From assembly GCA_002269645.1 (NCBI GenBank), contig NIVC01002710.1:1-51574 (forward strand): 51,574 nucleotides of DNA. Direction: 5' to 3'. The notes under the pieces were generated by a model. It was not told the origin of the DNA, searched no databases, and saw only the letters and a list, made by a program, of their open reading frames with translations. Both the position numbers and the translations under genes were made by a program. Of the stretch, positions 1-50,893 are shown one piece after another. Each line of letters starts with the position of its first letter. The first letter of the stretch is position 1. The DNA comes from Macrostomum lignano. Its lineage: Eukaryota.

Positions 1-2087
1 TGGTGCGAATTGTATGTGAGGGCCCGCAACAGTACAGCGTCGGTAGGCACCTGGTTGTGTGCAGTAAGGATGTAGATATTGCAGATATTAAGCTTCAACA
101 GCTAGGATGTAAGGTTTAAAACAGGATATTGCACTCACTTTTGAAATAGCTCCAAGGAAGTCTGTGCACGCATAACTTCCACAAGCGACGCGCCTTCCAA
201 ACTTAGCCAAAAAATAGCGGAGCTCAACAGTAGCAGATGCAAATAATAGTCGCGGGTCGTAGGTCCTTAAGAAAGTCGCCAAGGACCATTGGACCGACTG
301 CAAAGGCCCAGACCGCGAACTCATGGCCACGGAAGCGGACAGCTCACGCAGTGACCGCAGATTTCTGCGGTGAACGCTTCGGGCACGATAATTTCGCCCA
401 CGACTGCGTCGATGTCATCCAGTCGCGAATGCAGGCCTGGAGTATCGGCATCTGGATCCGGCCGCTCTCTGCGCTGACAAAAAAGCTGCCGCAGAAGCCA
501 CTTCACTTGACCGATTTCAAGCTGATGCAAGCAGCACGGAGGGCAACCAGATGTGAAATCAAAGCCGTTTAGATTTCGCAAAGGGGAGACGGCTTTCACC
601 TGCATAAAATGTGTGGAAAAGCAGCTGTGTATGTATATGTACTTTTTACTCATTATAGCCAATAAAACATTACGTCTTACCCCAAGCACGTCGTCAGCAC
701 GCGGAGGAATATTTGCAGCTAGATGAAGCGTATCTCGCTTGCACCGGAGGGTCGTCACCCTGCAACCGGCACGTCTAGCAGCTCTCTGAGTGGTACTGGT
801 TATCGCCAGCGGGTAGTAACGACAGCCCCGTATTAGTGGGTGCGTCTCCATGTAGCATTTGTCGCAGCCGTAGCGTGCGTTGTAACGCTTAATGCCAATG
901 GCATCGGCGCGGACAGGGGCGTCGAATATCCCGATGAGCGGATGCAGGTAAATCTGGCGACAGGCACCGGTTTCGTCGGTGACTCGAATGCCCTCCTCGC
1001 GCAACATGTTGAGCATGGGCACCACCAACTGCAAGAAGCGCGAGGCTCGCAATGATTTTTTGCCCGACCACACGCCGCAGAGCACGACAAAGCGCATCTT
1101 AAGCTTGTCGGCTATCTCATTTATAACAAGATACACGGGGCAAACTTCAGCGCCGGATGATCTTGCGACCGCGAAGCTGTCCGTACATAGCGTGTATGAT
1201 AGGTCGCATCGATCGTGCGGCTGAATGCGCTGCATAAAATTTTGATACGCCATGCTCCCCGCGAAGCTTAGACAACCTGGAGTATATACTTGATCACAGG
1301 GAAAAGTGACGTGGCGCAGCAGCCCATTTTGATCAATCATAACACGCAGCTGGGGGCGAACATCAAGCACCCAAAATTTCACGAGGTGCGCCTGGCATTG
1401 CTCACAGCGCGCGCCAGCTGGTGCTTCTCCGATGTGACTCAAACTGCAGGAGCAGCACACGGAGTGGCAAGTCGCATTTTTAGGTCGAAAGCAACCCTTT
1501 GTAGGCGCAATTCCCAGTGCCTTGTCGAGCTGCTTTATTGTGCGGGGAGCATTGTTGCCCCTTGGCAAAAGTCTTTGAATCAATTGGAGTAGCGAGGTTG
1601 TCGACTTTCGGCGTAGCTTGCTTTTTCTACGAAAGGCCTCGATTGCTGCAGCTGCTTCACTAACAGTTATTGATGCTCCACCAAATAAAAGGTGATCTTG
1701 ACGAGTCGGTGGCGAATCAGCGGGACCGCCGCTGGCACCGGAAGGCGAAGCCCCGTCGGCCTGGGAATTATGCAGCGGCTCCTCCGATGCTGGCGAATCA
1801 GTGGGACCGCCGCTGGCACCGGAAGGCGAAGCCCCGTCGGCCTGGGAATTATGCAGCGGCTCCTCCGATGCTGGCGAATCAGCGGGACCGCCGCTGGCAC
1901 CGGAAGGCGAAGCCCCGTCGGCCTGGGAATTATGCAGCGGCTCCTCCGATGCTGGCGAATCAGCGGGACCGCCGCTGGCACCGGAAGGCAATGCTTCGTT
2001 GCGTCTTTGTTTTTTTATTTCTTTCTGGCGCTGCCTCCACTCCTGTTGCCGCTTTCTATTGGACTTCGGCATTTTGAGTAAAGACAT
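1..2087 (-). mobile_element. CMC-superfamily (CACTA/EnSpm/Mirage/Chapaev-like) DDE transposase gene; intron-containing, frameshifted near its 3' part, continues off the left edge
   Basis: ORF 321..2087 has the CMC motifs YTLCTDS..SS..VCPVYLVINE..RFVVLCGVWSGKK, GIFDAPVRA..YNARYGCDKC and FDF..PCCLHQLEIGQVKWLL. An in-frame 81-nt GT-AG intron (680..600) gives VLG|VKAVSPL. Downstream frames continue RSLRELS / FRGHEFAVWAFAVGPMVLGDFL / YYLHLLLLSSAIF..A..SLELF, then intron 138..51, then LY..RALTYNSH. Confidence 0.8.
1705..1990 (-). repeat. 81-bp coding tandem repeat (~3.5 copies; PSGASGGPADSPASEEPLHNSQADGAS) in the transposase N-terminus
   Basis: Near-identical 27-aa unit repeated in ORF 321..2087. 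Confidence 0.9.
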
Positions 2088-7694: not shown

Positions 7695-9843
7695 CTCAGC
7701 TCAGCCTGATGATGGAGGAGAGGCTTGGGGTGGCTGGCCGCCACAGTGACAGACAATTCAGGCTGGGATTTGTATTGGGACTGGTGACAAATAAGTCGGA
7801 ATGAGGGAAGTTGAGCAGAAAGCAAAGTGGGCGGAATCATGAGCTCAGGCATTAAGATCCTGAGTTTTGGTAGAGAGCATTAATTATCCACTATTATACT
7901 CAAATTGCACAATAATGACACTAAGTCTTCAGTTGAATATTGTTATTATTTAAGGTCTCAATAAACAGTTTTTAATTTTACTCTTTTAGGCCAAGATAAA
8001 AAAATTGATTTATATTTTCAAACCAAAATGCCTAATTTAACTATACTCAGTTATGAAATCAGTTAATAAAATAAAATTTATAAAGCATGAATATCCAATA
8101 TGCCATTGCAAAGTATAGACTGGATGAATACTTATTTTAAAACTTAAAGACCAAATGCTTTCCCTACATATTGCTTTAAATTCAAATAGTCCTTGGTTGA
8201 CTCATTCCTTGCTCTGCTCTAGTCATGTTTTTAAATAAAAAACAAGTAAAACATTTTTGTAATATTCATTGTGTTATAACTGGTTATATAATCTTGAATC
8301 TAAAAAATACTTTTAAATTATTCCAACATTCCTCTATAAAATAGGTGCTAAGGTTAAAGATGATCAAGAAGTGGCCTAGCAAGTTGCAGTGAAAGAATTA
8401 TCTTCTATTATGTCATTATGACACTATGCCAGTGTATACTAGCATTACTAGTAGATAATAAGAATGCATACTAGTAAAAAGCAATAAATACTTATTCTTA
8501 GACTTATTTAGACCAATAATTAGACTATACATAGATCTATTCTAGACTTGTATATAGAAATTAACCCAAGGAATTCAGGTCTAACTAATAAATAAATTAT
8601 ATTAAAGATAACCTATCACAACTTTAGTGTTAATAGTAAAATATTAAAGAGAAAAAAAGAGGCTTATAACAATTTCATTTTACTTTTTAAGATTGAAGTA
8701 AAGCATTATGACAATTTTGGTATTAGCTATAGAATAGAAGAAAGATCTATTATATTATAGCTTTGATATTAATAGATAAAATTTATGAGACAAGGGAAAC
8801 CCTTAGCCCTAGGACAACTTTTGTGACAATAGTAGAATTGAAATAGACTTAGCATTAGGCCTATCATAGCATTGAGGGCAAAGGTAAGCCTAGAATATTC
8901 TTAAAATAATACAAAACCCTTATTAGGCCAACAATTTTGTCTTTGGCATCAGGTTTTGCAACAGAAATAACCCCTACTATATTATAAAGCCAAAATGTTG
9001 GGCTATTCTAGTTTTTTTATATTAGACATTTTTATCAATAGATAGAGGATAAAAGGTTAAAAAAATATTGAAAAGAAATTTATTAAGTAAAAAAATAAAT
9101 TAAAAATAATTTTAACAAACCTAATCTATAGGAAAGATATACAATATACAAGGGAAATTTCTATTATATATTGGCTTTACTTGTTATACCTATCAAATAT
9201 ATGATCAGGCCAAGTTATGTTTATAGCCATTGCATGCATTAAAAACTATTATAGGCCTATATAGCTATATTTGCAATAATAATTATTATATAGTATGACT
9301 TAGTCTAACTTAATGACTAATAAATATTTAGCTAAAATGATTATAACAATATTAATGCTAAGCTAATAGACAGTTAATAATTATTCAAAAAAGCATTAAT
9401 AAAAAAATTATATTATCGCTTTTAGAAAATGTTCTTTTTTGTACAATAGCTATAAAATAGTTTAAAATTTGAAGTCCATTAAAGTATTTTCCTTCTTTGT
9501 AAGCTCTAGAAAACTATAGCATTGGTAATGGTATTCTTATATTGTTTGCAATTTTTTAAATTAATTTTATTTTGCATTGCTTTTATATAATAATTTTGTT
9601 CTGGCTTTCTATTGTATCTCTCTATTAATTGAATTATATACAAAGTCCATTTTAAAATTTACCTTCTATTATGCAAAAACATGTTATTTCTTCCCATAGT
9701 TTGGATTATACATTAGTATACACCAGGTCTAATGTTGGAAAAAATTGAGAACATTTGTACAATAGAACAAAAATATATACTCTTGTCTTGATATATGCTA
9801 AGAAATCTTGGTATACATGTTACCTTCTAACATGCTTGGGCAT

Positions 9844-9991
9844 AACCTAGGGATTTACCCAGCCATTTCTATTGGCAACACACACATGTAAGTCGCTATT
9901 GGACGGAATAGTAGTCACGTGACTACTCTCAGCTAATAGTGACTTACATGTGTGTGTTGCCAATAGAAATGGCCAGGTGAATCCCTAGGTT
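9844..9991. mobile_element. 148-bp foldback (MITE-like) palindrome
   Basis: aacctagggatttacc..ccatttctattggcaacacacacatgtaagtcgctatt pairs with aatagtgacttacatgtgtgtgttgccaatagaaatgg..atccctaggtt. No clear TSD. Confidence 0.7.
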
Positions 9992-12096
9992 GCGCATATA
10001 TGCCTTCTAAGCTATAAATCTCTTTGACTATGGACATAATAGGCCTACAAACAAGTTTTTAGGCAAAAAAACATGGTGCCTAATAGGTAAAATACATTAG
10101 AAGGCCTACAAAAGTGTTGAAAATTTAAAATACAAAGTCTAAAGATTTTTTTCAAATTATAAGATAACCTTTTTATTGATCAATTTTCTAAAGTAAGGTG
10201 TCCTTATATTTGGACAAGTAAGATTTATCAAATAAAAAATAGGCCTATACTAAAAGTTATTTTCGAATTCTTACTGGAGTCCCTACTGTGGCCACTAGGC
10301 ATAAAGCAAATAGTAGCTAGGCCTAGCCATGATTGCAATTTATTCATATTTTAAAACTCAATGACAATAAAAGTTTGACTCAATTAAAATTTTAACAAAG
10401 CACCAACCATCATTTTAGGCCTATTAGGACATGAAAGTCTTCCAAAGTAGTGCTGTAATATAGTGAACTTAGTGTACTATATATAAAGTCATGAACAAAA
10501 AACAAGGCATTGAATTAGGTCAGGGCTATTAGTTAGTATTATTACTAGGGCAACTCGGCCAGCTGGCCAGGGCAAGGGGCAATAAGAATTTAGCTTTTTC
10601 TTTTCATTTATTTTATAAAAGTAACATAAGTAGGCCTTAGTAATATCATATAATATCAAATAGTCGTCGCTAGCAAATATTACATATGATTCAGATTCTC
10701 TTGCGGCAGTCGGGTTACCACCTTGTTTATTGAAATTTCATAGTAATAATATTTACACACCGTCGATAGTAAATTTTTTGTGAATTTAATTGCGTGCCCC
10801 CAACTCCCGGAAATTTTTCGCGTTGCTTTCCCAACGTTTGTTTAATACGTCACCTTCCCGTATGTTGACTTTGTTCGTCCTTGTCTTGTCCTTCTATTTT
10901 GTCCCACTGATGAATCGATGCTTTCCCACTCTTGTTTGCTGAATTTTGCCGTTTATTTCTGCGCTATTTGTTTTTTCTCAACCCTGTGCCCACTTCCTTG
11001 TCCAACCTGCTGCCCAACTGCCCGTCCAAGTCTCGTCCTTGTTGTTGAATTTTTGTAAACCTATTTATTGCGAGTCTCAGGCTCTTCTGCCAAAAACCTC
11101 CCCCTCCTTCCTTCTCGCAACCACCCGTGACCTTTGCGTTCAGTGAAGTTAAGTTAGAGTTGAGCCTGCGATAATATTTTAGTTTTCATTTAAGCTACTA
11201 GCAGCCGCACTTCACTTATTTATAGCGCACCGCGGCTCTGCTCGTTGTATTATTAGTCGACCTAAATACTTAATACCTGACTTCTAAACTAATTTATTTC
11301 TTAATATTCACTAACAACAATAAATAATAATAATAACAATCATCAGTAACTTTATTTTCGTCAATCAATTAATTAAGCCCATAGCCTATCTTGAGTCTTT
11401 GACCGCGGGGCGTAAAATAACCAAATAATTCTCATCTCAAAGAAAGCTCTGAGAATAGCTTCGTTCCGCAATTCGAGAATTACGGTGGTGGCAGCTTTAC
11501 CCTACTGAAAGTAATCAGCTCAACAAATCGACGCATTAATTTACGGTGTCAGGATCTCCGGTGTTACCATTTTGAACGACCGTGCCGCTAAAAGACCGCT
11601 CGCCTACGATTGAAACTACCCTCCCCCCGGAATTTGAGGACCCCGACTGTCGGAGTAAAACAGGAGAAAGAATTTCGTTGTGATTCGTCTGCGCGACTTT
11701 TCCGGATTTATTCGTGCGAATGCAACATCGACCGGTTTTCCAAGAAAACCCACTACAAAAATTCCACTATTTTTTCTCCACCCCACCTCACTCTCTTACG
11801 AACTATAGTTCTTCGAAACATCACAAAATTTTGTCAAAAAGAAAGATTTAACAAACTCAATTTAGTATGATTAAATAAATCAATATGCATTATTTGCAGG
11901 ATGGCTGTGAAATCACTGGTGCAACGCCTTATTGAAATCGTTCCAAACCATAATTAGCGCTTTGGCGCCAATTTTCCGTTGACTGAGCACATACAAAGCG
12001 CACAGATTAGCCTACTGCACGCAGGCACGCACCGTAGTGATGCACAAGCTCATACAGATTGTACTTGTACAGCGGCCCTGACTGTATAATCGTCAG

Positions 12097-13699: not shown

Positions 13700-16600
13700 T
13701 CAGGACTCAAGCCGCACACAGTGCCAACCCAGCTCAGGCACGAGGCCCTCCTCAGACTCAGTGGCAGACTTGGGCAGCGCAGTGAGCAGATGCATCGGGC
13801 CGCCGATCTGTGCCTGGTTGTCGGCCGTCAGCTCGGGCACGTCGGACCTTTGCGGCGACCCCAACGGCGGCAGTGCGGCGCCTTTCGTGGCCGGGGCGCG
13901 AAAGAAGATGTGCCTGGCCAGCTGCCAGTCCACGAACTCGTGGCGCTGCCAGGCCAGGTAGGAGTGGTCCCGGTACGTGTCATTGCTCAGAATGTGACAG
14001 CGCGGGCCCGAGCTGAGGGCGGCGTGCAGAGCGAACAGGTCGTCAGCTGCGGCAGTTTGGAACAGGCTGATGGCGCCGATGCCTCCGTGCTGGGAGCGGA
14101 GCTTTTCCAGCAGAGCCTGCGGTTGAAGATGTTTCTTGGAAAATTTACTGCTAATACTGGGAAAGGTGTCCCGTGCATACAGTAACGCTGGCACTGTATA
14201 AGAGTCGCTCAATGTGTCACTCATTGTGTTGCTCATTGTGTCGCTCAATGTATTGCTCATTGTGTTGCTCATTGTATTGATCATTGTATTGCTCATTGTA
14301 TTGCTCATTGTGTTGCTCATTGTGTCGCTCATTGTATTGCTCATTGTGTTGGTCATTGTGTCGCTCATTGTATTGCTCATTGTGTCGCTCATTGTGTTGC
14401 TCATTGTGTTGCTCATTGTGTCGCTCATTGTATTGCTCATTGTGTCGCTCATTGTATTGCTCATTGTGTCGCTCATTGTATTGCTCATTGTGTCGCTCAT
14501 TGTATTGCTCATTGTGTCGCTCATTGTATTGCTCATTGTGTCGCTCATTGTATTGCTCATTGTATTGCTCATTGTATTGCTCATTGTGTTGCTCATTGTG
14601 TCGCTCATTGTGTTGCTCATTGTGTTGGTCATTGTGTCGCTCATTGTATTGCTCATTGTGTTGCTCATTGTGTCGCTCATTGTGTTGGTCATTGTGTCGC
14701 TCATTGTGTTGCTCATTGTATCGCTCATTGTGTTGCTCAATGTACTGCTCATTTGTCGCTCATTGTGTTGCTCATTGTATCGCTCATTGTGTTGCTCAAT
14801 GTACTGCTCATTGTGTCGCTCATTGTGTTGCTCATTGTGTTGCTCATTGTATTGCTCATTGTGTCGCTGACTGTGTCGCTGACTGTGTCACTGACTGTCG
14901 CTAATTGCAACACCAATTCAGGTTTTATTTACCTGAAATTTGCGCAGCTGGGCGTCCCGGCCGGTGCTATACTTGTACAGCAAGCCAATGTGCAGCGGTT
15001 TTGGCGCCCGCTGTCCACGAATCATCCAGTTGACAGCGTCTGACAGGTGCGACACTGACTGCTTCATCGTGTAATGAAGCTGCGAATAAAAAGGTAGGTT
15101 AAGCGAATAAGTTACTTAACTTGACTTAATCTGATAATTGTCTTCAGGCCAATGCTCCTTCGTACATGGTCTTTGTTCGGAACAAATGTGGCTGCACATC
15201 ATAGTGTGACTCGACCGATTACGGGTCATTGTCTAAGATCTCTGACTAGAAGTCTTTGTCCAATCTAAATCTGACTAGAAGTCTTTGTCCAATCTAAATC
15301 TGACTAGAGGTCTTTGTCCAATCTAAATCTTGTTCGTTTTTTGGGACGAGTAAGAAAATTGATCGAGTCTCAGCCTTTAGCTTAACTCTGCAGACGCTTG
15401 GTCTTTTCAATTATATTTTGGCAACTCTTTAAGCCACCGAATTGAACTGTACAAATGTCCATAGACATCAATAGGATTCTCAGCCGTTGACGGCTACTAA
15501 GCAAAGTGCATTCTCTAATAAATAAAAGTTCATCACAGTGCTAACAAATCTGACTAGAGGTCTTTGTCCAATCTAAATCTGACTAGAGGTCTTTGTCCAA
15601 TCTAAATCTGACTAGAGGTCTTTGTCCAATCTAAATCTGACTAGAGGTCTTTGTCCAATCTGAATCTGACTAGAGGTCTTTGTCCAATCTAAATCTGACT
15701 AGAGGTCTTTGTCCAATCTAAATCTGACTAGAGGTCTTTGTCCAATCTAAATCTGACTAGAGGTTCTTGTCCTATCTAAATCTGAAAAGAGGTCTTTGTC
15801 TTTGTCCAATCTAAATCTAGGGTCTAGATACATACATAGTTTTACCATATTAAGTCCAGCATACTAAACAATATAACAAAGACTCACCCATTGTGTATTG
15901 ACCAGCCGGCCCCTGTGCAGCAGCAGATTGCTGGTGTCAACCACCAGATCGAAGGGCCCGTTAGCAGCCGACGTCTCAGCCAGCCAGCGCCTGTAGGCGG
16001 CCAAGACGGCCGGGGGCGCGGGCTGGCCGGCGCCGCCTGTCAGCACCCTGGAGACCGCGGCCAGGAGGTTGGCAACCTCGGCTTCGGTGGGCTCCGGCCG
16101 GTAGGCAGCTGGTGGAAAGCGGCAGCCGCAGGCTGGGCAGCTGCGAGCTGATAGGTGTTCGAGAATTGCCTTTTCGAGCTTATTTATATGTACAGGTCTT
16201 TGTACCCAGCCTAAATTATATGCACAGGTCTTTGTATCCAGCCTAAATTATATGTTCAGGTCTTTGTACCCAGCCTAAATGATATGCACAGGTCTTTGTA
16301 CCCAGCCTAAATTATATGCACAGGTCTTTGTATCCAGCCTAAATTATATGTACGAGTTAAATTATCGTACAGATCTTTGTACACAGCCTATATTATACGT
16401 ATAGGTCTTTGTTTCCAGTCCATTTTGCCTACGTGTCTTTGTACCCAGCCTATTTTGTCACATGTTGGTCTTTGTCAAGCTCATAGTTGGTCCTTGTACA
16501 GCCTAGTTCAGGTCTTTGTTCAGTCAATTTCAGTTGCTTTCCAACCTTCAAGCAGCCGTTTGGCTCACCTCGAATTGTCGACGAAGTCGCCTCACTCTCC

Positions 16601-21165: not shown

Positions 21166-24100
21166 ATGGACCCCACTGAAAAAGTTTGCAGCCAGTGGCT
21201 CCCCGATGGCGGTGTTATTGGAATTATGAGCAGCGACAGCTCGGATGAGAAGTCTGTGACGCCTCCGCCTCTGCCTCCTGCTCCTGATGCCATCGAGATC
21301 CTGGATGCGCTCAGCGACCGCGGTCGAATTCACTTCACTGTCCGCTCCTCGTTGCCAACCTCCGAAGGACCGACGCTCTCGCTGGCCCGCGTGTCCGTCA
21401 TCCGCTGCCACGAGGACTTCGCCAGGCTGGCGCGGCACCTCTCCGAAGTCGAGGACTTCGCTGGCTGCCTGGTGCCGCAGGCGCCCCAGGCGCCGGACTT
21501 TGCGGCGATTCGCTCCAAGCTGCTCCGCCTGAAGGCTGGCGGCGTTGGCGGCGCGCACCAGCTGACTAGCGAGGAGTACGGCCGGCTGAAGCTCGAGCTT
21601 GAAGGGTGAGCTTGGGACTTGAGCGCGTCAGGGATTAGGGTTAGGGTAGGTTTGGGGTTAGTGCCGTTGCACATTAATCTGGAGCTTGTGCGTGAAAATT
21701 GGCCCGGGGGGGGGGTTGTTGTGCGCGTTTCGCAGCCAGCGGAGCCTCATTGCTGTTTGTGGGACGGATGTCGCCGAATCCTGCAAATATTATATAATTG
21801 TTATTAGGGGTTTGCAGTGTAATTTCGCCGGCCCCATCAATTCGCAGAGAGTACCGACACGCCTTTAAGAAGGCCATCGCCAGCCACGAAGCATTTCTCC
21901 GCTCCATTGCCGAGCATCCGCGCCTGCGGCACGACCGGCGATTCCGGAATTTCCTGATGGACGAGTCGGAAGGTGGATCGGTAGGGATTTGAGTGCTTGC
22001 CGTAGCACTCCTGCTTTTATTGCAAATCCATTGCGCTTTTTGCTGTACCATAGAGAGCCTACTGAAGATTTCTGCTAGTGGTTGCCAATAAGGTTGTACA
22101 ATATTTTTCTAAAATCTGAATATATGCTGTAATTACTACTGTAAAACTAGCGTAAAACTCAGATAGTGTAATTTTTGAAGGCTAATTTCCTGGCAAAATA
22201 CACTGCCGAGAAATGAAAAAATCCAATTTTGACAGTCACACTCGGGCGGCACTAAGCAGCGAGTTCAGAGCCTGTTGCAACCGGGCCTCCTCCTGACAGC
22301 CCTGATTGACAGCCGGTCAGCCGTTGTGCCGCGAATTCTCGGCTCGGTAGCCGGGCCGGAGCCCGATGCTGATGGCGACGAGTTCTTCAACGCCCAGCGA
22401 CGGTTTGCGATAGGCTATCAGCGAGCCCTGCTGCCGGCTCTGCGGTGTCTGGACCGGCTGGCCCTGCTGCAGAAAAGTGCGTCTGCTGCCGCTGTCTATC
22501 TGGTTTGGGTTGTGTATTTTTTTGTTGTGGTTATGTATTGTTGGTTGTAGTTGTGTCTTGTTGGTTGTGGTTGTGTCTTGTTGGTTGTGGTTGTGTCTTG
22601 TTGGTTGTAGTTGTGTCTTGTTGGTTGTGGTTGTGTCTTGTTGGTTGTAGTTGTGTCTTGTTGGTTGTGGTTGTGTCTTGTTGGTTGTAGTTGTGTCTTG
22701 TTGGTTGTGGTTGTGTCTTGTTGGTTGTAGTTGTGTCTTTTGTCGGTTGTGGTTATGTCTTGTTGGTTGTGGTTGTGTCTTGTTGGTTGTGGTTGTGTCT
22801 TGTTGGTTGTGGTTGTGTCTTGTTGGTTGTAGTTGTGTCTTGTTGGTTGTGGTTGTGTCTTGTTGGTTGTAGTTGTGTCTTGTTGGTTGTGGTTGTGTCT
22901 TGTTGGTTGTAGTTGTGTCTTTTGTCGGTTGTGGTTGTGTCTTGTTGGTTGTAGTTGTGTCTTGTTGGTTGTGGTTGTGTCTTGTTGGTTGTGGTTGTGT
23001 CTTGTTGGTTGTAGTTGTGTCTTGTTGGTTGTGGTTGTGTCTTGTTGGTTGTAGTTGTGTCTTGTTGGTTGTGGTTGTGTCTTGTTGGTTGTGGTTGTGT
23101 CTTGTTGGTTGTAGTTGTGTCTTGTTGGTTGTGGTTGTGTCTTGTTGGTTGTGGTTGTGTCTTGTTGGTTGTAGTTGTGTCTTGTTGGTTGTAGTTGTGT
23201 CTTGTTGGTTGTGGTTGTGTCTTGTTGGTTGTGGTTGTGTCTTGTTGGTTGTGGTTGTGTCTTGTTGGTTGTAGTTGTGTCTTGTTGGTTGTGGTTGTGT
23301 CTTGTTGGTTGTGGTTGTGTCTTGTTGGTTGTGGTTGTGTCTTGTTGGTTGTAGTTGTGTCTTGTTGGTTGTGGTTGTGTCTTGTTGGTTGTGGTTATGT
23401 CTTGTTGGTTGTGGTTATGTCTTGTTGGTTGTAGTTGTGTCTTGTTGGTTGTGGTTATGTCTTGTTGGTTGTGGTTGTGTCTTGGGGTTGTAGTTCTGTC
23501 TTTTGTTGGTTGTGGTTGTGTATTTAGTGGTTGGGATTGTATCTTTTGTTGTTGATTATGTGTTTAGTGATTAGGGTTGTGCATTGGTCTTGGTCTATAT
23601 TTGTGTCTTAGTTTTAGATTAACAGTTCAATAAAGTGCCAGCTGCTGTATAAACCGAATGAGCCATAGCTGCTCTTCAAGACTATCTTTGATGTGATTCC
23701 AGCGTCCCTCCTGCTCTCCGCAGACACGGCAGACAGTTTAATTCGGGTGTCCACGGCTGCTCAGGACTGCTCGAAAATTGAGCAGGTCAACGCGGATCGA
23801 GCATTGGCAGAGTGAGCTGACAGTTGTCTGAATTTATTGCTATGATTTTAGCGTTTTTGCAGTGTTATACTACTGAGAGTAGGCTGTAAATTGGATTGTC
23901 AATTTTTATGCCTGTGATTAGCGCCGATGGGGAGGCGCAGGATGGCGCCAATGGGGAGTCGCAGGATGGCGCCAATAAGGAGGCGCAGGGTGGCGCCAAT
24001 GGGGAGGCGCAGGATGGCGCCAATAAGGAGGCGCAGGGTGGCGCCAATGGGGAGGCGCAGGATGGCGCCAATGTGGAGTCGCAGGATGGCGCCAATGAGG

Positions 24101-25291
24101 AGGCGCAGGATGATTTCCAAATAAGCCGCCGAATCCCCCCGATGTGCCCCAGCAGGTTTCTGCGTCACTTCGGCGACCACTTCGAGCTCTACCGTCGAGC
24201 TGAGGCGCAGCTGGCCGCCGAGATGGATGCCGGCCTCGCCGACAGCCTGCACCGCCTCGCCGCCGACTGCTCCGCCGTTGTCGCCCTGCTGGACCGTCGG
24301 CGGCGACTGGCTGCCAGTTTAGAGGCCGCCAGCGCCCGCCTGCGCCGCGCCCGGCAACCCTCGGAGGAGGCCGACGCCGCCAAAGCCCGGCTGGCCGCCT
24401 TCCACCGCCTCAACGAAGTCACCGACGTCGCCAGGCTGGAGCTGCTGGGCTTCCGGAAGCGCTGGCTGCTGGCGCTGTGCGGCCGTCTGGTGGATACGGG
24501 CGAGATGCGAATCCGCCATGCCAGGGTGAGGCCTCCCAGATCCTCAGTTGCTGGGCAAGCCTCCCAGATCCCCAACTGAGATCCTCAGTTGCTGGGCCAG
24601 CATCCCAGATCCTCAGTTGTTGGGCCAGCCTCCCAGATCCCCAACTGAGATCCTCAGTTGCTGGGCCAGCCTCCCAGATCCTCAGTTACTGGGCCAGCCT
24701 CCCAGATCCTCAGTTGCTGGGCCAGCCTCCCAGATCCCCAACTGAGATCCTCAGTTGCTGGGCCAGCCTCCCAGATCCCCAACTGAGATCCTCAGTTGCT
24801 GGGCCAGCCTCCCAGATCCCCAACTGAGATCCTCAGTTGCTGGGCCAGCCTCCCAGATCCCCAACTGAGATCCTCAGTTGCTGGGCAAGCCTCCCAGATC
24901 CTCAGTTGCTGGGCAGGCCTCCCAGATCCTCAGTTGCTGGGCCAGCCTCCCAGATCCCCAACTGAGATCCTCAGTTGCTGGGCCAGCCTCCCAGATCCCC
25001 AACTGAGATCCTCAGTTGCTGGGCCAGCCTCCCAGATTCCCAACTGAGATCCTCGGTTGCTGGGCCAGCCTCCCAGATCCCCAACTGAGATCCTCAGTTC
25101 CTGGGCAAGCCTCCCAGATCCTCAGCTGCTGGGCCAGCCTCCCAGATCCTGTTCACCCGGGGAGAAAGTTGCCGGTGGCTATCGAGGCTAGACTGTAAGG
25201 TTGAGAGTCTGAGTCAAGATGAATTATTGTGCACTTTCAGAGCCAAGTGCAACTTCTAGAGGAAACAATCGACAAGATGAAGAATGACTGA
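21166..25291 (+). CDS. SNX6: Sorting nexin of the SNX5/SNX6 class (PX-BAR); exons 21166..21605, 21848..21972, 22300..22476, 23724..23811, 24156..24525, 25241..25291 (416 aa)
   Basis: IEILDALSDRGRIHFTV..VIRCHEDF..EDFAGCLVPQAPQAPDF..SEEYGRLKLELE|GEYRHAFKKAIASHEAFL..HPRL; BAR part DEFF, EL..FRKR..L..GE..IRHA; terminal QVQLLEE. GT-AG phases are consistent. The exon 2/3 junction is less certain. Confidence 0.9.
22530..23490. repeat. 20-bp minisatellite (tgttggttgtRgttgtgtct) in SNX intron 3
   Basis: Tandem array seen directly. Confidence 0.97.
23925..24112. repeat. 24-bp minisatellite (ggcgccaatggggaggcgcaggat) in SNX intron 4
   Basis: About 7 copies. Confidence 0.9.
24530..25150. repeat. 41-bp minisatellite with an internal hairpin, SNX intron 5
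   Basis: Unit cctcccagatccccaactgagatcctcagttgctgggccag, plus truncated variants. Confidence 0.93.
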
Positions 25292-28134: not shown

Positions 28135-29382
28135 GGAATCGTGTAACCATGGAATCATGTAGCCATGGAATCATGTAACCATGGAATCATGTAACCATGG
28201 AATAATGTAGCCATGGAATCATGTAACCATGGAATAATGTAGCCATGGAATCATGTAACCATGGAATAATGTAGCCATGGAATCATGTAACCATGAAATC
28301 ATGTAGCCATGGAATCATGTAACCATGAAATCATGTAACCGTGGAATCATGTAACCATGGAATCATGTAACCATGAAATCATGTAACCGTGGAATCACGT
28401 AACCATGGAATCATGTAACCATGAAATCATGTAGCCATGGAATCATGTAACCATGAAATCATGTAACCGTGGAATCATGTAACCATGGAATCATGTAACC
28501 ATGAAATCATGTAACCGTGGAATCATGTAACCATGGAATCATGTAACCATGAAATCATGTAACCGTGGAATCATGTAACCATGGAATCATGTAACCATGA
28601 AATCATGTAACCGTGGAATCATGTAACCATGAAATCATGTAACCGTGGAATCATGTAACCATGGAATCATGTAACCATGAAATCATGTAACCGTGGAATC
28701 ATGTAACCATGGAATCATGTAACCATGAAATCATGTAACCGTGGAATCATGTAACCATGGAATCATGTAACCGTGGAATCATGTAGCCATGGAATCATGT
28801 AACCGTGGAATCATGTAACCATGAAATCATGTAACCATGGAATCATGTAACCGTGGAATCATGTAACCATGAAATCATGTAACCGTGGAATCATGTAACC
28901 ATGAAATCATGTAACCATGGAATCATGTAACCGTGGAATCATGTAACCATGAAATCATGTAACCATGGAATCATGTAACCGTGGAATCATGTAACCATGA
29001 AATCATGTAACCATGGAATCATGTAACCATGAAATCATGTAGCCATGGAATCATGTAACCATGGAATCATGTAACCATGAAATCATGTAACCGTGGAATC
29101 ATGTAACCATGAAATCATGTAACCATGGAATCATGTAACCGTGGAATCATGTAACCATGAAATCATGTAACCATGGAATCATGTAACCGTGGAATCATGT
29201 AACCATGAAATCATGTAACCATGGAATCATGTAACCATGAAATCATGTAGCCATGGAATCATGTAACCATGAAATCATGTAACCATGGAATCATGTAACC
29301 ATGGAATCATGTAACCGTGGAATCATGTAACCATGGAATCATGTAACCATGGAATCATGTAACCATGGAATCATGTAACCGT
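28135..29382. repeat. 16-bp minisatellite (atcatgtaaccatgga)
   Basis: Long homogeneous array; possibly lies in a 5'UTR intron (donor-like gtgagt near 28046). Confidence 0.97.
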
Positions 29383-29724
29383 GGAAGCAGACTAATCATT
29401 CCCAATGAGTTAAACTGTAATTTTGCCAACAGGATCGAAGTACTCGTTCATAATTTTCTTTTTCGGAATTTGTTCTCGCGAGTTTCATGCCGCAGTGGTG
29501 TGGATTCTGCATCCGACAAGACGTGTTTGTTTTCACAGAAGGACAATTCGTTCGTTCTCTGCCGGGCTGCATAATGATGAGTCAATTTCGACTGCTGACT
29601 TTCGTCCTGCTCGTCAGCTGGGTCGCGACTGGTGCTGGTGAGCAGAGTTGGAAACAATGAACGGACTCAAGTTTGTTTCATGGTAGAACTTTTTCTATTG
29701 AGCACGATGCTCTGGAAGTAATTT

Positions 29725-31775
29725 GAACAGGATCTCACAGGGTGTCACAGGATCGCACAGGATGTCACAGGATCTCACAGGGTGTCACAGGATCGCACAG
29801 GATGTCACAGGATCGCACAGGATGTCACAGGATCGCACAGGATGTCACAGGATCTCACAGGGTGTCACAGGATCGCACAGGATGTCACAGGATCGCACAG
29901 GATGTCACAGGATCTCACAGGGTGTCACAGGATCGCACAGGATGTCACAGGATCTCACAGGGTGTCACAGGATCGCACAGGATGTCACAGGATCGCACAG
30001 GATGTCACAGGATCTCACAGGGTGTCACAGGATCGCACAGGATGTCACGGGATCTCACAGGGTGTCACAGGATCGCACAGGATGTCACAGGATCGCACAG
30101 GATGTCACAGGATCGCACAGGATGTCACAGGATCTCACAGGGTGTCACAGGATCGCACAGGATGTCACAGGATCGCACAGGATGTCACAGGATCGCACAG
30201 GGTGTCACAGGATCGCACAGGATGTCACAGAATGTCACAGGATCACACAGGATCGCACAGGATGTCACAGGATGTCACAGGATCACACAGGATGTCACAG
30301 GATCGCACAGGGTGTCACAGGATCGCACAGGATGTCACGGGATCGCACAGGATGTCACAGGATCGCACAGGGTGTCACAGGATCGCACAGGATGTCACAG
30401 GATCGCACAGGATGTCACAGGATCGCACAGGATGTCACAGGATCGCACAGGATGTCACAGGATCGCACAGGATGTCACAGGATCGCACAGGATCACACAG
30501 GATCGCACAGGATGTCACAGGATGTCACAGGATCACACAGGATCGCACAGGATGTCACAGGATCGCACAGGATGTCACAGGATCGCACAGGATGTCACAG
30601 GATCGCACAGGATGTCACAGGATCGCACAGGATGTCACAGGATGTCACAGGATCACACAGGATCGCACAGGATGTCACAGGATGTCACAGGATCACACAG
30701 GATCGCACAGGATGTCACAGGATCGCACAGGATGTCACAGGATCGCACAGGATGTCACAGGATCTCACAGGGTGTCACAGGATCGCACAGGATGTCACGG
30801 GATCTCACAGGGTGTCACAGGATCGCACAGGATGTCACAGGATCGCACAGGATGTCACAGGATCGCACAGGATGTCACAGGATCTCACAGGGTGTCACAG
30901 GATCGCACAGGATGTCACAGGATCGCACAGGATGTCACAGGATCTCACAGGGTGTCACAGGATCGCACAGGATGTCACAGGATCTCACAGGGTGTCACAG
31001 GATCGCACAGGATGTCACAGGATCGCACAGGATGTCACAGGATCGCACAGGGTGTCACAGGATCGCACAGGATGTCACAGGATGTCACAGGATCACACAG
31101 GATCGCACAGGATGTCACAGGATGTCACAGGATCACACAGGATGTCACAGGATCGCACAGGGTGTCACAGGATCGCACAGGATGTCACGGGATCGCACAG
31201 GATGTCACAGGATCGCACAGGGTGTCACAGGATCGCACAGGATGTCACAGGATCGCACAGGATGTCACAGGATCGCACAGGATGTCACAGGATCGCACAG
31301 GATGTCACAGGATCGCACAGGATGTCACAGGATGTCACAGGATCACACAGGATCGCACAGGATGTCACAGGATGTCACAGGATCACACAGGATCGCACAG
31401 GATGTCACAGGATCGCACAGGATGTCACAGGATCGCACAGGATGTCACAGGATCGCACAGGATGTCACAGGATCGCACAGGATGTCACAGGATCACACAG
31501 GATCGCACAGGATGTCACAGGATGTCACAGGATCACACAGGATCGCACAGGATGTCACAGGATCGCACAGGATGTCACAGGATCGCACAGGATGTCACAG
31601 GATCGCACAGGGTGTCACAGGATCGCACAGGATGTCACAGGATCGCACAGGATGTCACAGGATCGCACAGGATGTCACAGGATCGCACAGGATGTCACAG
31701 GATCGCACAGGATGTCACAGGATCGCACAGGATGTCACAGGATCGCACAGGGTGTCACAGGATCACACAGGATGT
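29725..31775. repeat. 10/20-bp satellite (ggatcgcaca ggatgtcaca) in intron 1 of the AbfB-like gene
   Basis: About 205 decamers. Confidence 0.98.
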
Positions 31776-32569
31776 TACGGCCAAAAGCTGTTGATTAGAA
31801 TTGGTTTGGTATTAAATTACATTAACAATCTAGTAGGTAAATATTGAATATGAAACATGGAGTGCTTTAATAACCCTTAAATTTCATGTTACCCAAGTCA
31901 ACATATTACATATCATCAGTCACATTTTTAAATGTGGAGGAAGCGAAACGAGGGGGTATGCGAAATTTAAGACATGAAGTTTGTAGAATTTAAAACAGAC
32001 CGCTTTGAAAGGTCCATAAACTGAACCGTCGAGTCCCCCCCCACAGGTCAGTCGGGCGAACCTTCTGCAGTGAAGTTCTGGTCTTCGCCTGCGGGCCGCA
32101 CGCCTCGTTCTACTGGGCCCAGACTGGAGCTGATTCAATAGCGATCTCGACAGCTGCCCTGCCTCTCAGGCTGACCGTCATGCCCCCGCTCGATGGCACT
32201 CCAGGCGCTGTCTCCCTGGTCCAAACCGGCTCCGCCACCCGCGTCAACGAGCTCGGGGAGGCGACGCTGGCAGCCGGGAGCGGCGATTTCAATCGCAACG
32301 CCAGCTCCCTGATGCTGGTGGCTGACGAATTCTGTCACCACATCCGGTTGAGCGTCGCTCAGGCTTCCCCAATGCTGACTCTGCGTCATCAGAACTTCAA
32401 TCTTCGAGCCTCGATCTACGATAGATGCCTTGTTCTTGACTGACTCCGCTTTGACGTTGCACTGCGTTAAATGTGAGTTCTGTACCCCTGCTTGTTGATT
32501 GTAGTCTTGGCCGGGAGACTTGCTCGTGAAAAACCAATGCACTGGGTCAGAGGGACAACTTAGAAAATG

Positions 32570-33115
32570 GGAGACACTACCTGAGGAAATAGGAAACACT
32601 ACCTGAGGAAATAGGAAACACTACCTGAGGAAATAGGAAACACTACCTGAGGAAATAGGAAACACTACCTGAGGAAATGGGACACACACCACCTGAGAAA
32701 ATGGGAGACAATACCTGAAGAAATGGGAAACACTATTTGAGGGGATCGGAAACACTAAGGAAATGGGAAACACTACCTGAGGAAATAGGAAACACTACCT
32801 GAGGAAATAGGAAACACTACCTGAGGAAATGGGAAACACTACCTGAGGAAATGGGAAACACTACCTGAGGAAATAGGAAACACTACCTGAGGAAATAGGA
32901 AACACTACCTGAGGAAATAGGAAACACTACCTGAGGAAATGGGAAACACTACCTGTAGAAATGGGACACACCACCTGAGAAAATGGGAGACAATACCTGA
33001 AGAAATGGGAAACACTATTTGAGGGGATCGGAAACACTAAGGAAATGGGAAACACTACCTGAGGAAATGGGAAACACTACTTGAGGGAATGGGAGACACT
33101 ACATGTACCTGAGAG
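32570..33115. repeat. 22-bp minisatellite (ggaaacactacctgaggaaata) with an internal block duplication, AbfB-like intron 2
   Basis: Variant block ..gagacaatacctgaagaaatgggaaacactatttgaggggatcgg.. occurs twice (~32700 and ~32985). Confidence 0.92.
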
Positions 33116-34438
33116 AATGGAAGTCGAAGACGCTTCCAGGTATACACCCCTGAGAGAATGACATGGTAGCTAGATGGACATCGCATTTTTTAATTGCGAC
33201 ATCTCCTGGAATAGGAGAATAAGGATAATGTATCTAATCCCGACAGACGAGCGACAATGTTCTTGGCGGCACAGACTGGCTGTATCCGGTGGTAGCTACT
33301 TATTTTGTCCAGCAGGAAGTTCCTGCCAGTTGGTTGGATCTGAATCTATAGCGCAACACTATTCACGGAGCAAGCCGGAATCAGCGCGGAACTCCAGCCG
33401 CGGTGTCATTCCAATCGGCAACCAACGCCAGCTTCTACCTGTATGTTACGCTTGGTGACAGCCTGAGACTTCTCAAGAACAATGCCAGCTCAGAATTCTC
33501 GGTGGCCGCAACGTTCGTTTGAGCTACGTAGATTCCAATGGCCCTAACTGTCGAAGCTACCGCCTGCTACTGACTGCACCAACGCCTGGCGTGCTGATAT
33601 CCGACAGTGTTGGAAAACTCATGGCAGTTGCGTGGAACGTCAAAGACTATGTTCGCAACGTCAATTTTTCATTTAGTTGCGATTCAGGTAAGATTCTCTG
33701 TGTAGTAGCACTTAGCCTATATAGATGTAGAATTTTGATTATAATGTTGTTTATTTATTACGTGAGCCGAACGACTGAATGAAAGGCATGTAATGTTGGT
33801 AAATCAAGTAAGTTAACCCGAATGTTAAATTTAAATATAACCACATTTGCGGTTAAATTTACATGCATTCAGCTTGTCAGTCAAACTACATTTCTAAAAA
33901 TTAAAGCTGGATAAGGACATACGGATGCCTTCGGTTAAATTATTGTAAACATAATATTTTAGAGACAAAACAGCCCATCTGTGCAATAATCGGGACTGTT
34001 GCTAGATTTAACATTAGATCAAGACTCCTTTAAACGTTTAAAATGTTTGATATAACAAACGCTTATACCACCGATTGAAAATAATAAACTTTAGAGCAGG
34101 ATCTGACAAAATGGCAGCATACTAGATATGTTTTGCTACTTTCTGCGTCAAATAAAATGCTTTCTTTGTTTTGCTCTGTTGAATTTGAATCACTTCTAGC
34201 ACGCCATTTTTTGTAAAGTTTTAAGTTTACTAAGCGGCTATTGCGTGGGTTAAATGTGTCATCGAATCTCTGACTTTTGGTGTTTTAATTCTATTTATCA
34301 GTCTAGCTCAATAAGACAACTAGTGCAAGTTGAGTCAGTCAACTTTTCCAATTTGCTTACAGTCTCGGTCTAATTGCTTGTGTTAAAATTAAAATTTCGC
34401 TGTTTATTAGGCCTAGTGTTTAAAAGTTTGCTTTTGAA

Positions 34439-48666
<14,228 letters not shown>

Positions 48667-49325: not shown

Positions 49326-49579
49326 GTGTCAGAGGCGCTGTGTAACTCACCCCTTGAAGATGTCACACCAGCCTTCAGCAAGCTTTGGATGTCTTCCAAA
49401 GCATCGCAACGAAATTCTAGGCTTTAGGCAGTCCGTTCGCGTGTTACATTTATTGTACCTGGCACCATAATTTGCTGCATTAATGATGCATTTGGGTTTG
49501 TCAATTTATTCTAATTGTTAACTAAGAATGCGCAAAGTTGGTATTGCTAATTTTTAATACTGCAATTTGAGTGTCCGTA

Positions 49580-50893
49580 CGAGGGATACTCCAAAAGTTT
49601 TGCAATTCAACCACTTGCGCAAGTCGCACAATCTTCAAAACCAACTCTCTGTACAATAAACATGTACATAGTCCCCACCTCAATTTTCAAGTGAATTCAT
49701 ACATATACGCCTGCTCAGCCCCCAGTCAAAGTCAGAGACTCCTTAACTGTACAGCTGCAGCCATGGAATTGAATCGTGAGCAGAATCGGCTACTAATTTG
49801 GTACTGCCACAAGCGAAAGCTCACGGCGCTTGAGACTCATGCCGAGCTACTAGCAACATTGGAGGCTCAAGCGCCGTCATATGCTACGGTTACACGCTGG
49901 TACGCGAGTTCCAGGCCGGCAGGACCAGCTTTTCTGACGACCCCCGGCCGGGAGACCTCCGACAGCAGTGACGGAGGAAAACATCGCTGCAGTGCAGGAG
50001 CTGATTCATCAGGATCGCGAATCACCACGGACATGCTAGCTATGAATGTCGGCATTGGATCGGCAGCGGTCGATACGATTCTACACGATCACCTAAGAGT
50101 CAGGAAGCTTTGTGCCCGATGGATACCCCACATCCTGACAGATGCTCAAAAACAGGCCCGCATGGAATTCTGTCAGTTTCTCATCGATCGATATGAGCAC
50201 GGGAGCCATCAGCGCCGCTCTGAGGTCATCACTGGTGATGAGACGTTTCTCTATCATTTTGACGTCGAGACAAAGCGCAGCAGTGCAGAGTGGGTGCCGG
50301 AAGGTGGTCAACGACCCCTGAAAGCAAGGCGGTCCCGGTCCCAGGGCAAGCGGATGTTGCCATCTTCTTCGACTCACAAGGCGTGGTGGCGATGGTGAAG
50401 CTGGAGGGTCAAGCTACAGTCACTGCTCGATGGTACACTGAAGAGTGCTTGCCAGTCGTGATCGACAGCGTGACCCAGAGGGCGCCAAGGACGGGAATGC
50501 GAGGGCGGAAGCTTCACCATGACAACGCCCCCGCCCACACGGCTGCTGCAACTCGAGCGTTCCTGGACCAAGAGGGCATTTCAACGCTACCACACCCGGC
50601 CTACTCACCAGACCTCGCCCCCTGCGACTTCTGGCTCTTTCCAGAAATCAAAAAGTCGCTTAGGGGGCGCAGGGGGGCGCAGGTTTCAGTCCGACGAGGA
50701 GCTGGAGCAGGCGGCGAAGGAGGCGATTGACGGCATCCCAATTGAAGACTTCCAGGGCTTGATGAACAAGTGGCTCGGACGAGCGCACAAGTGTTTGCAG
50801 TTCCGGGGAGCCTACTTTGAAGGATTGTAATAGAAAAGTTTGGCAAAATTAACTTTAAATAGTCGAATTGCAAAACTTTTAGAGTATCCCTCG
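49580..50893 (+). mobile_element. Full-length mariner (D,D34D) transposon, 1314 bp; transposase 49763..50830 frameshifted
   Basis: TA TSD. 29-bp TIRs CGAGGGATACTC(C/T)AAAAGTTTTGCAATTC with one mismatch. Motifs ARWIPHILT, ITGDET, LHHDNAPAH, YSPDLAPCDFWLF, with 34 residues between D2 and D3. The TIR resembles irritans/Hsmar2 types (recall). Confidence 0.95.

What the first reader, a model, noticed from the sequence alone, without database searches (positions are those of the whole stretch)
29574..33687. Hidden secreted AbfB/CBM42-like beta-trefoil repeat gene between SNX5/6 and MCM3
Seen: a clean signal-peptide exon, then two exons with canonical splice sites whose frames stitch into several repeats of the pattern (PP/AG)L.GTP.AVS(L/F)...LRH.NF.L....F..(D/A)ATF. 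Established: this pattern matches AbfB (Pfam PF05270, CBM42), found in fungal and actinobacterial arabinofuranosidases and in animal otogelins. Inference: a small secreted lectin-like protein built only from these repeats, with no catalytic or vWD domain visible. It may be lineage-specific or horizontally acquired and is missed by ORF calling.
Basis: partly seen in the sequence, partly recalled or inferred. Interest (0 to 1): 0.72.

Follow-up and report, generated by a model that had tools for sequence, protein, structure and literature searches.

The report
Decayed AbfB-type lectin gene relic
Between the SNX5-like and MCM3 genes lies the remnant of an animal gene for a small secreted sugar-binding (AbfB/CBM42-type) protein, but its reading frame is broken in several places, so it is most likely a pseudogene.

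Summary
The sequence features are real. There is a signal-peptide-like first exon (29574-29637) and two GC-rich blocks (32047-32472, 33313-33687), all with consensus splice sites. Both blocks resemble the AbfB/CBM42 beta-trefoil domain.

Support for the resemblance:
- AbfB is the only Pfam family hit, at 17.5 bits, below the 22.8-bit cut-off.
- The two blocks are the top two of 2228 six-frame fragments against an AbfB profile.
- Frameshift-tolerant alignment scores 68 and 65, against 37 +/- 3.5 for shuffles.
- The best non-spurious protein match worldwide is a tunicate (Clavelina) secreted protein made only of AbfB domains.

The two-domain protein can be read only by changing frame about four times (~32094, ~32420, ~33388, ~33516). 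Most family-wide motifs are lost. GC3 is 0.62, against 0.81-0.83 in the neighbouring genes. SNX5 and MCM3 read through without a lesion.

Verdict: most likely a decaying copy of a known, poorly studied animal family of secreted AbfB-only lectin-like proteins, not a hidden functional gene. One uninterrupted 151-aa, one-domain ORF exists if the acceptor 5 nt downstream is used, so residual expression cannot be excluded. Horizontal transfer is not supported. Interest is low.

The parts
29574..29637 (+). Exon 1: ATG plus 21 codons and 1 nt, reading MMSQFRLLTFVLLVSWVATGA(G). It looks like a signal peptide and is followed by a GTGAGC donor (phase 1).
   Evidence: The signal-peptide character was judged by eye (n-region with R, an 11-residue hydrophobic core, small residues at the end); no predictor was available. 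The Clavelina homologue also has a first exon that holds only the signal peptide.
29727..31775 (.). Intron 1 minisatellite: 20-nt unit ACAGGATCGCACAGGATGTC, about 104 copies.
   Evidence: TRF score 3356, 90% matches.
32047..32472 (+). Exon 2 (426 nt): AbfB/CBM42-like domain 1 with recognisable alpha, beta and gamma subdomains. The core 32096-32413 is read in one frame (..PPLDGTPGAVSL..LTLRHQNFNLRAS). There are tandem acceptors, AG 32045-46 and AG 32050-51.
   Evidence: tblastn of P0002 covers 32177-32437, E 0.011. Ranks 2nd of 2228 six-frame fragments against the AbfB profile. Frameshift-aware score 68 against shuffles 37.5 +/- 3.3. Alignment A1. AF2 with a family MSA gives a 12-strand model that is closest to CBM42 structures.
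32094..32096 (+). Frame change 1. The reading frame set by acceptor 32047 runs into a TAG at 32139-32141, while the AbfB core lies in the next frame. This change is avoidable if acceptor 32052 is used.
32413..32443 (+). Frame change 2. The core frame ends at TGA 32441-32443. The last strand (IDALFLTDSALTLHCVKC) and the GTGAGT donor are in another frame. The site holds no homopolymer.
32565..33102 (.). Intron 2 minisatellite: 22-nt unit, about 25 copies.
33313..33687 (+). Exon 3 (375 nt): AbfB-like domain 2. The beta subdomain is well preserved (GTPAAVSFQSATNASFYLYVTLGDSLRLLKNNASSEFSVAATFV, 33388-33519). The alpha subdomain is shortened and the gamma subdomain is barely recognisable. A GTAAGA donor lies at 33688; if it is not spliced, the frame runs on to a stop at 33780-33782.
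   Evidence: Pfam AbfB E 0.036 for this piece alone. tblastn of P0002, E 5.5e-4. Top six-frame hit against the AbfB profile, E 4.9e-4. Frameshift-aware score 65 against 37.3 +/- 3.5.
33349..33390 (+). Lesion 3. Either a frame change near 33386-33390, or, in the frame of the core, an in-frame TAG at 33349-33351.
33516..33522 (+). Lesion 4. The core frame ends at TGA 33520-33522. The rest of the exon (RLSYVDSNG...NVNFSFSCDSG) is open only in another frame.

Best explanation
The locus is a degenerating copy (pseudogene) of a metazoan gene for a small secreted lectin-like protein. The ancestral gene had a signal-peptide exon followed by two phase-1/phase-1 exons, each encoding one AbfB/CBM42-type beta-trefoil domain.

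The intact ancestor would have been exported and would have bound glycans multivalently through the three subdomain pockets of each trefoil, as CBM42 modules bind arabinofuranose side chains. It would have served adhesion or recognition of non-self glycans; this function is inferred from the family and was not tested.

In the present sequence the reading frame is interrupted about four times, most family-wide motifs are gone, and the codon-position bias typical of this genome's genes has largely eroded. No two-domain lectin can be made. At most a 151-aa one-domain product (signal peptide plus a diverged trefoil lacking the canonical last strand) could be made from exon 1 plus exon 2, using the acceptor at 32052.
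For: Homology is shown.
- AbfB is the only Pfam family hit: E 0.0047 for the conceptual protein and 0.036 for the exon-3 core alone.
- Exhaustive phmmer over 1.84 billion representatives gives one non-spurious hit, Clavelina P0002 (E 8e-4). P0002 is a signal peptide plus four AbfB domains (Pfam 8e-115).
- In tblastn of P0002 against the window, the two best hits are the two blocks, on the same strand.
- Against an AbfB profile built here, the two blocks rank 1 and 2 of 2228 six-frame fragments.
- Frameshift-aware alignment scores 68 and 65. Shuffles give 37 +/- 3.5 (maximum 44) and eight real control segments give 32-48.

Breakage is shown.
- No single frame is open across either exon.
- None of the shift sites lies in a homopolymer longer than three bases.
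- By contrast, 373 aa of MCM3 in 4 exons and 139 aa of SNX5 align to PDB homologues without a frame break.

Decay is shown.
- Identity to family members is 13-24%, while members share about 35-45% with each other.
- The YLRH and DA(S/T)F motifs survive in only one of the recognisable subdomains.
- The window blocks score 17 and 8 bits, against 56-105 bits for functional Clavelina AbfB exons on the same profile.
- GC3 is 0.62, against 0.83 in MCM3 and 0.81 in SNX5.
Against: - All five splice junctions still have good consensus.
- Both exons have lengths that are multiples of three.
- The open runs are rather long for neutral DNA: 144 and 107 codons, reached by 5.7% and 3.3% of shuffles.
- A residual GC3 excess remains in the inferred frames.
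- With the tandem acceptor at 32052, exon 1 plus exon 2 give an uninterrupted 151-aa ORF.
- No reads, transcripts, orthologous locus or population data could be examined, so assembly or haplotype indels cannot be excluded.
- The organism is not identified, and its proteins are absent from the databases searched.
Confidence: 0.62

Rival explanations
1. It is an intact, functional two-domain secreted AbfB lectin gene. The frame changes are assembly errors or belong to a null allele on the haplotype that was assembled.
For: Splice sites are preserved and both exon lengths are multiples of three. In each exon the frame changes come in compensating pairs, so the exon ends stay in phase 1. The open runs are long.
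Against: About four indels in 0.8 kb, against none in about 1.5 kb of neighbouring coding sequence that was checked. None lies in a homopolymer longer than three bases. Even after frame correction the protein scores below the Pfam cut-off (17.5 against 22.8 bits), and it lacks the family motifs in most subdomains. GC3 is far below that of the neighbours.
Confidence: 0.13
2. A truncated gene is still in use. Exon 1 is spliced to the acceptor at 32052 and translation stops at TGA 32441-32443. This gives a 151-aa secreted protein with one highly diverged trefoil-like domain. Exon 3 is a dead remnant or 3' UTR.
For: The ORF is uninterrupted with this acceptor. Exon 2 keeps more codon-position bias than exon 3 (GC3 0.68 against 0.55). 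The frame-0 alignment to P0002 runs to within one codon of the stop. AF2 with a family MSA folds the frame-corrected domain 1, which is not this ORF's own product, as a 12-strand trefoil with pLDDT 73.5.
Against: The first AG after the polypyrimidine tract is 32045-46, which is the better-placed acceptor. The product would lack the canonical last strand and the beta-subdomain motif. The AF2 result is driven by the family alignment; the single-sequence model has pLDDT 31.5. There are no homologues of such a protein in 1.84 billion representatives beyond the weak P0002 hit.
Confidence: 0.15
3. The AbfB resemblance is a chance pattern in GC-rich non-coding DNA, and there never was a gene here.
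For: Every database score is below the curated threshold. The P0002 E-value sums five stretches that are individually insignificant, and the top hit P0001 is a repeat-summing artefact of the same kind.
Against: Two independent blocks on the same strand, flanked by consensus splice sites, are the top two AbfB-profile hits in the window. They score 8-9 SD above shuffles and above all real-sequence controls. The rare motif GTP.AVS[LF] occurs only in these two places in the window.
Confidence: 0.03
4. The gene was recently acquired by horizontal transfer from a bacterium or fungus, as the reader suggested as an alternative.
For: AbfB/CBM42 is mainly a microbial module. After P0002, some of the next-best single-unit matches are cyanobacterial.
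Against: The locus has three exons with spliceosomal introns, a separate signal-peptide exon and phase-1 junctions. AbfB-only secreted proteins are already present in tunicates and cnidarians. The best match is the tunicate protein. No catalytic GH module lies next to it.
Confidence: 0.03

Closest known systems
Clavelina lepadiformis AbfB-only secreted protein (P0002, 585 aa; named by UniRef as an alpha-L-arabinofuranosidase B arabinose-binding domain protein)
   Same: Both have a signal peptide in its own first exon, followed only by tandem AbfB domains. They share the motif G(L)TGTPG.VSFQS ... LRHQNY.L ... DA(S/T)F. P0002 is the best non-spurious database match to the window sequence.
   Different: P0002 has four intact domains, with 56-105 bits per exon on the AbfB profile; the window has two broken, motif-poor domains at 17 and 8 bits. 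In P0002 each domain is split by introns that the window lacks. There is no synteny: the Clavelina gene lies between a LITAF-like and a NACHT-LRR gene.
Hydra and Hydractinia AbfB-only proteins (for example LOC100199315 and LOC130636763; Hydra basal-disc-specific transcripts, PMC5080974)
   Same: They are secreted animal proteins built only of tandem PF05270 domains. Their expression in Hydra's adhesive basal disc is reported in PMC5080974.
   Different: They are intact and expressed. The paper treats them as possible glycosidases, although the domain is a binding module. Identity to the relic is about 14-20%.
CBM42, the arabinose-binding domain of GH54 and GH43 alpha-L-arabinofuranosidases (A. 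kawachii AbfB, S. avermitilis Araf43A, C. thermocellum CBM42A)
   Same: It is the same Pfam family. It has three repeats of about 40 residues (alpha, beta, gamma) forming a beta-trefoil (PMC2518083). The family-guided model of domain 1 superposes on 3kmv, 9nxg and 3aki with TM 0.76-0.77 and rmsd 2.5 A.
   Different: The microbial modules are appended to a catalytic domain and bind arabinofuranose. Here there is no catalytic domain, sequence identity is 16-18%, and most conserved motif residues are lost.
Otogelin and otogelin-like (vertebrate inner-ear glycoproteins)
   Same: They are animal extracellular proteins that contain an AbfB domain (PMC4948705).
   Different: Otogelins are very large VWD-C8-TIL mucin-like proteins. 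No such domains were found in the scanned ORFs of 32-39 kb, and the exon set is closed by the neighbouring SNX5 and MCM3 genes.

Membership tests
Pfam PF05270 AbfB / CAZy CBM42 | Sequence match to the family profile at or above the curated gathering score (22.8 bits) | tested here: not met
   The frame-corrected conceptual protein scores 17.5 bits (E 0.0047) and the exon-3 core alone 14.6 bits. AbfB is nevertheless the only family reported. Independent profile and shuffle tests show the similarity is real. The sequence is therefore AbfB-derived but not a bona fide member by the curated criterion.
Pfam PF05270 AbfB / CAZy CBM42 | Three repeats of about 40 residues (alpha, beta, gamma) that fold into a beta-trefoil | tested here: inconclusive
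   Domain 1 aligns over all three subdomains. AF2 with 18 family sequences gives 12 strands, pLDDT 73.5 and pTM 0.64, and the best PDB matches are CBM42. The alignment drives that result, though: the single-sequence model fails (pLDDT 31.5). Domain 2 has a shortened alpha subdomain and an unrecognisable gamma subdomain.
Pfam PF05270 AbfB / CAZy CBM42 | Family-wide motifs in each subdomain (..SF.S.N.P..Y(L/I)RH.......L......F..DA(S/T)F), which include the sugar-contacting residues of CBM42. The sugar-contacting assignment is from my knowledge of Miyanaga et al. 2004 and was not re-read here. | tested here: not met
   Only the gamma subdomain of domain 1 keeps LRHQNF...TDSA. The beta subdomain of domain 1 reads TRVNELGE...RNASS. 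The beta subdomain of domain 2 reads FYLYVTLGD...VAATF.
Animal secreted AbfB-only proteins (Clavelina and Hydra type) | N-terminal signal peptide followed exclusively by AbfB domains, encoded by an uninterrupted ORF | tested here: not met
   The architecture is met in the conceptual translation. The ORF is interrupted about four times. The signal peptide was judged by eye only.
Otogelin / otogelin-like | VWD-C8-TIL units and a cystine knot in addition to the AbfB domain | tested here: not met
   The ORFs scanned in 32-39 kb give no Pfam hit, and AbfB is the only hit on the conceptual protein. The gene is bounded by SNX5 upstream and MCM3 downstream.

The most novel reading that the evidence does not exclude
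The locus encodes a functional, very fast-evolving, lineage-specific secreted beta-trefoil protein descended from AbfB/CBM42. It would be either the 151-aa one-domain form or a two-domain form masked by assembly or haplotype indels. It would have abandoned the canonical sugar-binding motifs and taken on a new ligand or role, and it would represent an undescribed animal subfamily.
Probability: 0.12. Interest if true: 0.4.

Novelty: new member of a known kind. Interest (0 to 1): 0.2.

Why it matters
The finding matters little by itself. It adds one degenerate member to a small, barely studied set of animal secreted proteins made only of AbfB/CBM42 trefoils, known from tunicates and cnidarians and, in Hydra, from the adhesive basal disc. 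It shows that this family is, or was, present in one more animal lineage and is being lost there. For annotation, the locus should be flagged as a pseudogene candidate and not as a missed protein-coding gene. If reads or transcripts showed it to be intact, it would be a modestly interesting case of a microbial-type carbohydrate-binding module evolving into a divergent animal lectin.

Tried and rejected
1. Word-indexed search of 5.8 billion proteins with the conceptual protein found no hit.
2. PDB sequence search found no hit at E <= 10.
3. The top hit of the exhaustive search, P0001 (bacterial PKD-repeat protein, E 3e-12), was rejected. It is the sum of 11 near-identical repeats scoring 1.6-10 bits each, it spans the artificial exon 2/exon 3 junction, and Pfam PKD models do not hit the query.
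4. Synteny test: the Clavelina AbfB gene is not next to SNX5/6 or MCM3. Four eukaryotic contigs that carry the most similar MCM3 fragments have no AbfB-like ORF within 10 kb.
5. Identifying the organism failed. The best MCM3-exon match is 67% identical and unnamed, and the 588-aa ORF of the window is not on record. MCM3 is about equally close to human, frog and fly MCM3, which suggests a slowly evolving non-vertebrate animal (inference).
6. Single-sequence AF2 was uninformative (pLDDT 31.5).
7. I searched for splice paths that avoid the lesions. Only the exon 1 to 32052 acceptor removes one lesion. No donor/acceptor pair bridges the others, because the shifts are 1-2 nt.
8. Placing the relic among animal or bacterial AbfB units failed: it is too diverged, and the top unit hits mix tunicate, Hydra and cyanobacterial sequences.
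9. There are no Rfam families in the window and no Pfam hit on the antisense ORF 32135-32599.
10. The literature has nothing on CBM42 in Metazoa beyond the otogelin and Hydra mentions.
Full report
**Context.** The window is animal nuclear DNA. Its exons are GC-rich (GC3 0.81-0.83), its intergenic DNA is AT-rich, and almost every intron holds a minisatellite. The finding lies between two + strand genes.
- Upstream is a sorting nexin. Its PX domain, from exons at 21250-21603 and 21858-21971, matches PDB SNX5 at E 1.6e-25. A BAR-like exon follows at 24157-24525.
- Downstream is MCM3. Four of its exons between 40.2 and 44.6 kb give 373 residues that align to human MCM3 135-506 at E 5e-190 without any frame break.

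**What is in the sequence.**
- Exon 1: an ATG at 29574 opens MMSQFRLLTFVLLVSWVATGAG, which ends at a GTGAGC donor after 29637 (phase 1).
- Intron 1 is 2.4 kb and consists mostly of a 20-nt minisatellite with 104 copies.
- Exon 2: a polypyrimidine tract and CAG lead into a 426-nt GC-rich block (32047-32472) that ends at a perfect GTGAGT donor.
- Intron 2 holds a 22-nt minisatellite.
- Exon 3: a second good acceptor opens a 375-nt block (33313-33687) that ends at GTAAGA.
- Both blocks are multiples of three and sit in phase 1 at both ends. This is the classic layout of shuffled extracellular domains (established knowledge).

**Is it AbfB-like beyond chance?** Yes, although every curated threshold is missed.
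- Pfam reports only AbfB (PF05270). The exon-3 core alone gives E 0.036. The frame-corrected conceptual protein gives E 0.0047 and 17.5 bits, against a gathering score of 22.8.
- The word-indexed search of 5.8 billion proteins and the PDB sequence search found nothing.
- The exhaustive phmmer search of 1.84 billion representatives returned two proteins.
  - P0001, a bacterial PKD-repeat protein, is an artefact. Its score is the sum of 11 near-identical repeats worth 1.6-10 bits each, and the match spans my artificial exon junction.
- P0002 (E 8e-4) is a 585-aa Clavelina lepadiformis protein with a signal peptide and four AbfB domains and nothing else (Pfam 8e-115). Its E-value also sums five stretches that are individually insignificant, so I ran independent tests.
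- tblastn of P0002 against the whole window puts the two blocks first and second (E 5.5e-4 and 0.011), on the same strand.
- An HMM built from 314 AbfB units ranks the two blocks first and second of 2228 six-frame fragments (E 4.9e-4 and 0.27).
- A frameshift-tolerant Smith-Waterman alignment against 46 animal AbfB units scores 68 and 65. Shuffles scored by the same best-of-46 rule give 37.5 +/- 3.3 and 37.3 +/- 3.5 (maximum 44). Eight real control segments of the window give 32-48.
- The motif GTP.AVS[LF] occurs only twice in all six frames of the window, once in each block.

**Is it a gene that merely escaped ORF calling?** Most likely not.
- No frame is open across either block.
- In exon 2 the frame set by the 32047 acceptor hits a TAG at 32139. 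The AbfB core (32096-32413) is in the next frame and ends at TGA 32441-32443. The last strand and the donor are again in the first frame.
- In exon 3 the core (33388-33519) is bounded by TAG 33349-33351 and TGA 33520-33522. The exon's start and end are open only in another frame.
- A two-domain protein therefore needs about four frame corrections (~32094, ~32420, ~33388, ~33516).
- None of the sites lies in a homopolymer longer than three bases, and about 1.5 kb of neighbouring coding sequence shows no frame break. General assembly noise is thus an unlikely cause.
- Even after correction the domains are only 13-24% identical to family members, and the family-wide YLRH and DA(S/T)F motifs survive in just one subdomain.
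- On the same profile, functional Clavelina exons score 56-105 bits, against 17 and 8 bits here.
- GC3 in the inferred frames is 0.62, against 0.83 (MCM3) and 0.81 (SNX5). Exon 3 is almost flat across codon positions.
- Together these are the marks of a decaying pseudogene.

**Caveats.**
- All five splice sites keep good consensus.
- The open runs (144 and 107 codons) are in the upper tail of shuffles, reached by 5.7% and 3.3% of them.
- The acceptor is tandem: AG at 32045-46 and again at 32050-51. With the second AG, exon 1 plus exon 2 form an uninterrupted 151-aa ORF ending at 32443. It would encode a signal peptide plus one diverged trefoil that lacks the canonical last strand. I cannot exclude that this truncated form is expressed, nor that the assembled haplotype is a null allele.
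- No reads, transcripts or orthologous loci were available. The organism is not represented in the protein collections: the best MCM3-exon match is 67% identical, and the window's long ORF is not on record.

**Structure.**
- AF2 of domain 1 with an alignment of 18 AbfB units gives a 12-strand model (pLDDT 73.5, pTM 0.64). Its best PDB neighbours are CBM42 modules: 3kmv, 9nxg, 3aki and 9fnk, with TM 0.76-0.77 and rmsd about 2.5 A. Generic beta-trefoil proteins rank lower.
- This shows compatibility with the fold but is partly circular, because the alignment consists of AbfB domains.
- The single-sequence model of the whole conceptual protein is uninformative (pLDDT 31.5).

**Comparison with what is known.**
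- CBM42 is a trefoil of three repeats of about 40 residues that binds arabinofuranose side chains (PMC2518083).
- In animals the domain is known from otogelin (PMC4948705).
- It is also known from secreted AbfB-only proteins of Hydra, Hydractinia and Clavelina. Two such Hydra transcripts are specific to the adhesive basal disc (PMC5080974).
- The relic matches the AbfB-only class in architecture. Like the Clavelina gene, it has a first exon that holds only the signal peptide. It shares neither that gene's internal introns nor its genomic neighbourhood.
- The scanned ORFs of 32-39 kb give no Pfam hit, vWD/C8/TIL included, so it is not an otogelin fragment.
- Horizontal transfer is not indicated. 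The locus has animal-type exon structure, its best match is a tunicate protein, and it is too diverged to be placed phylogenetically.

**Verdict.** The best-supported reading is a pseudogenised member of a known, little-studied animal family of secreted AbfB/CBM42 lectin-like proteins (confidence about 0.6). Smaller possibilities are a truncated one-domain product or an intact allele hidden by indels. Novelty: a new (degenerate) member of a known kind. Interest is low.

Noticed in passing
window 22508-23521, 28135-29386, 29727-31775, 32565-33102, 39200-39873 and others: Long, highly regular minisatellites (units of 16-41 nt, up to 104 copies) fill most introns and intergenic spacers. The 16-nt array GGAATCATGTAACCAT (about 78 copies) ends only about 190 nt upstream of the relic's ATG.
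   Followed up: partly
window 21250-24525 and 41280-44641, against 8000-10000 and 35000-39000: There is an extreme compositional contrast. GC3 is 0.81-0.83 in the SNX5 and MCM3 exons, while intergenic DNA has 27-36% GC. The organism could not be identified. Its MCM3 is about equally similar to human, frog and fly MCM3.
   Followed up: partly
window 321-2087 (-): A 588-aa ATG-to-stop ORF with N-terminal 27-aa Ser/Gly/Pro-rich repeats and a Cys-rich C-terminal part. It has no Pfam hit and no identical protein on record. It may be a transposon-derived gene.
   Followed up: partly
window 13700-14752 (-): A 350-aa ORF. Its first ~190 residues are encoded by an (MSNT/MSDT) minisatellite. Its C-terminal part gives a sub-threshold PRORP (protein-only RNase P) hit of 33.3 bits against a cut-off of 39.1.
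   Followed up: no
window 49571-50398 (+): An ORF with the HTH_48 domain of Mos1/mariner transposases (25.4 bits, above the cut-off).
   Followed up: no
window 32045-32051: A tandem acceptor (cacAG gtcAG, 5 nt apart) sits at the start of exon 2. The downstream AG puts exon 1 in frame with the AbfB core and yields an uninterrupted 151-aa ORF.
   Followed up: yes
L001 10135-10416 (-) (Clavelina lepadiformis CAUIVY010000124.1): There is an additional AbfB-like ORF fragment (42 bits) on the opposite strand, inside the called span of the Clavelina AbfB gene. It suggests a further AbfB copy or relic there.
   Followed up: no
conceptual protein residues 155-224 (window about 32450-32472 plus 33313-33500): This stretch weakly resembles bacterial PKD/K319L-like repeats (1.6-10 bits per repeat). 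Summed over 11 repeats, it made a PKD protein the top hit of the exhaustive search. I judged it spurious.
   Followed up: yes
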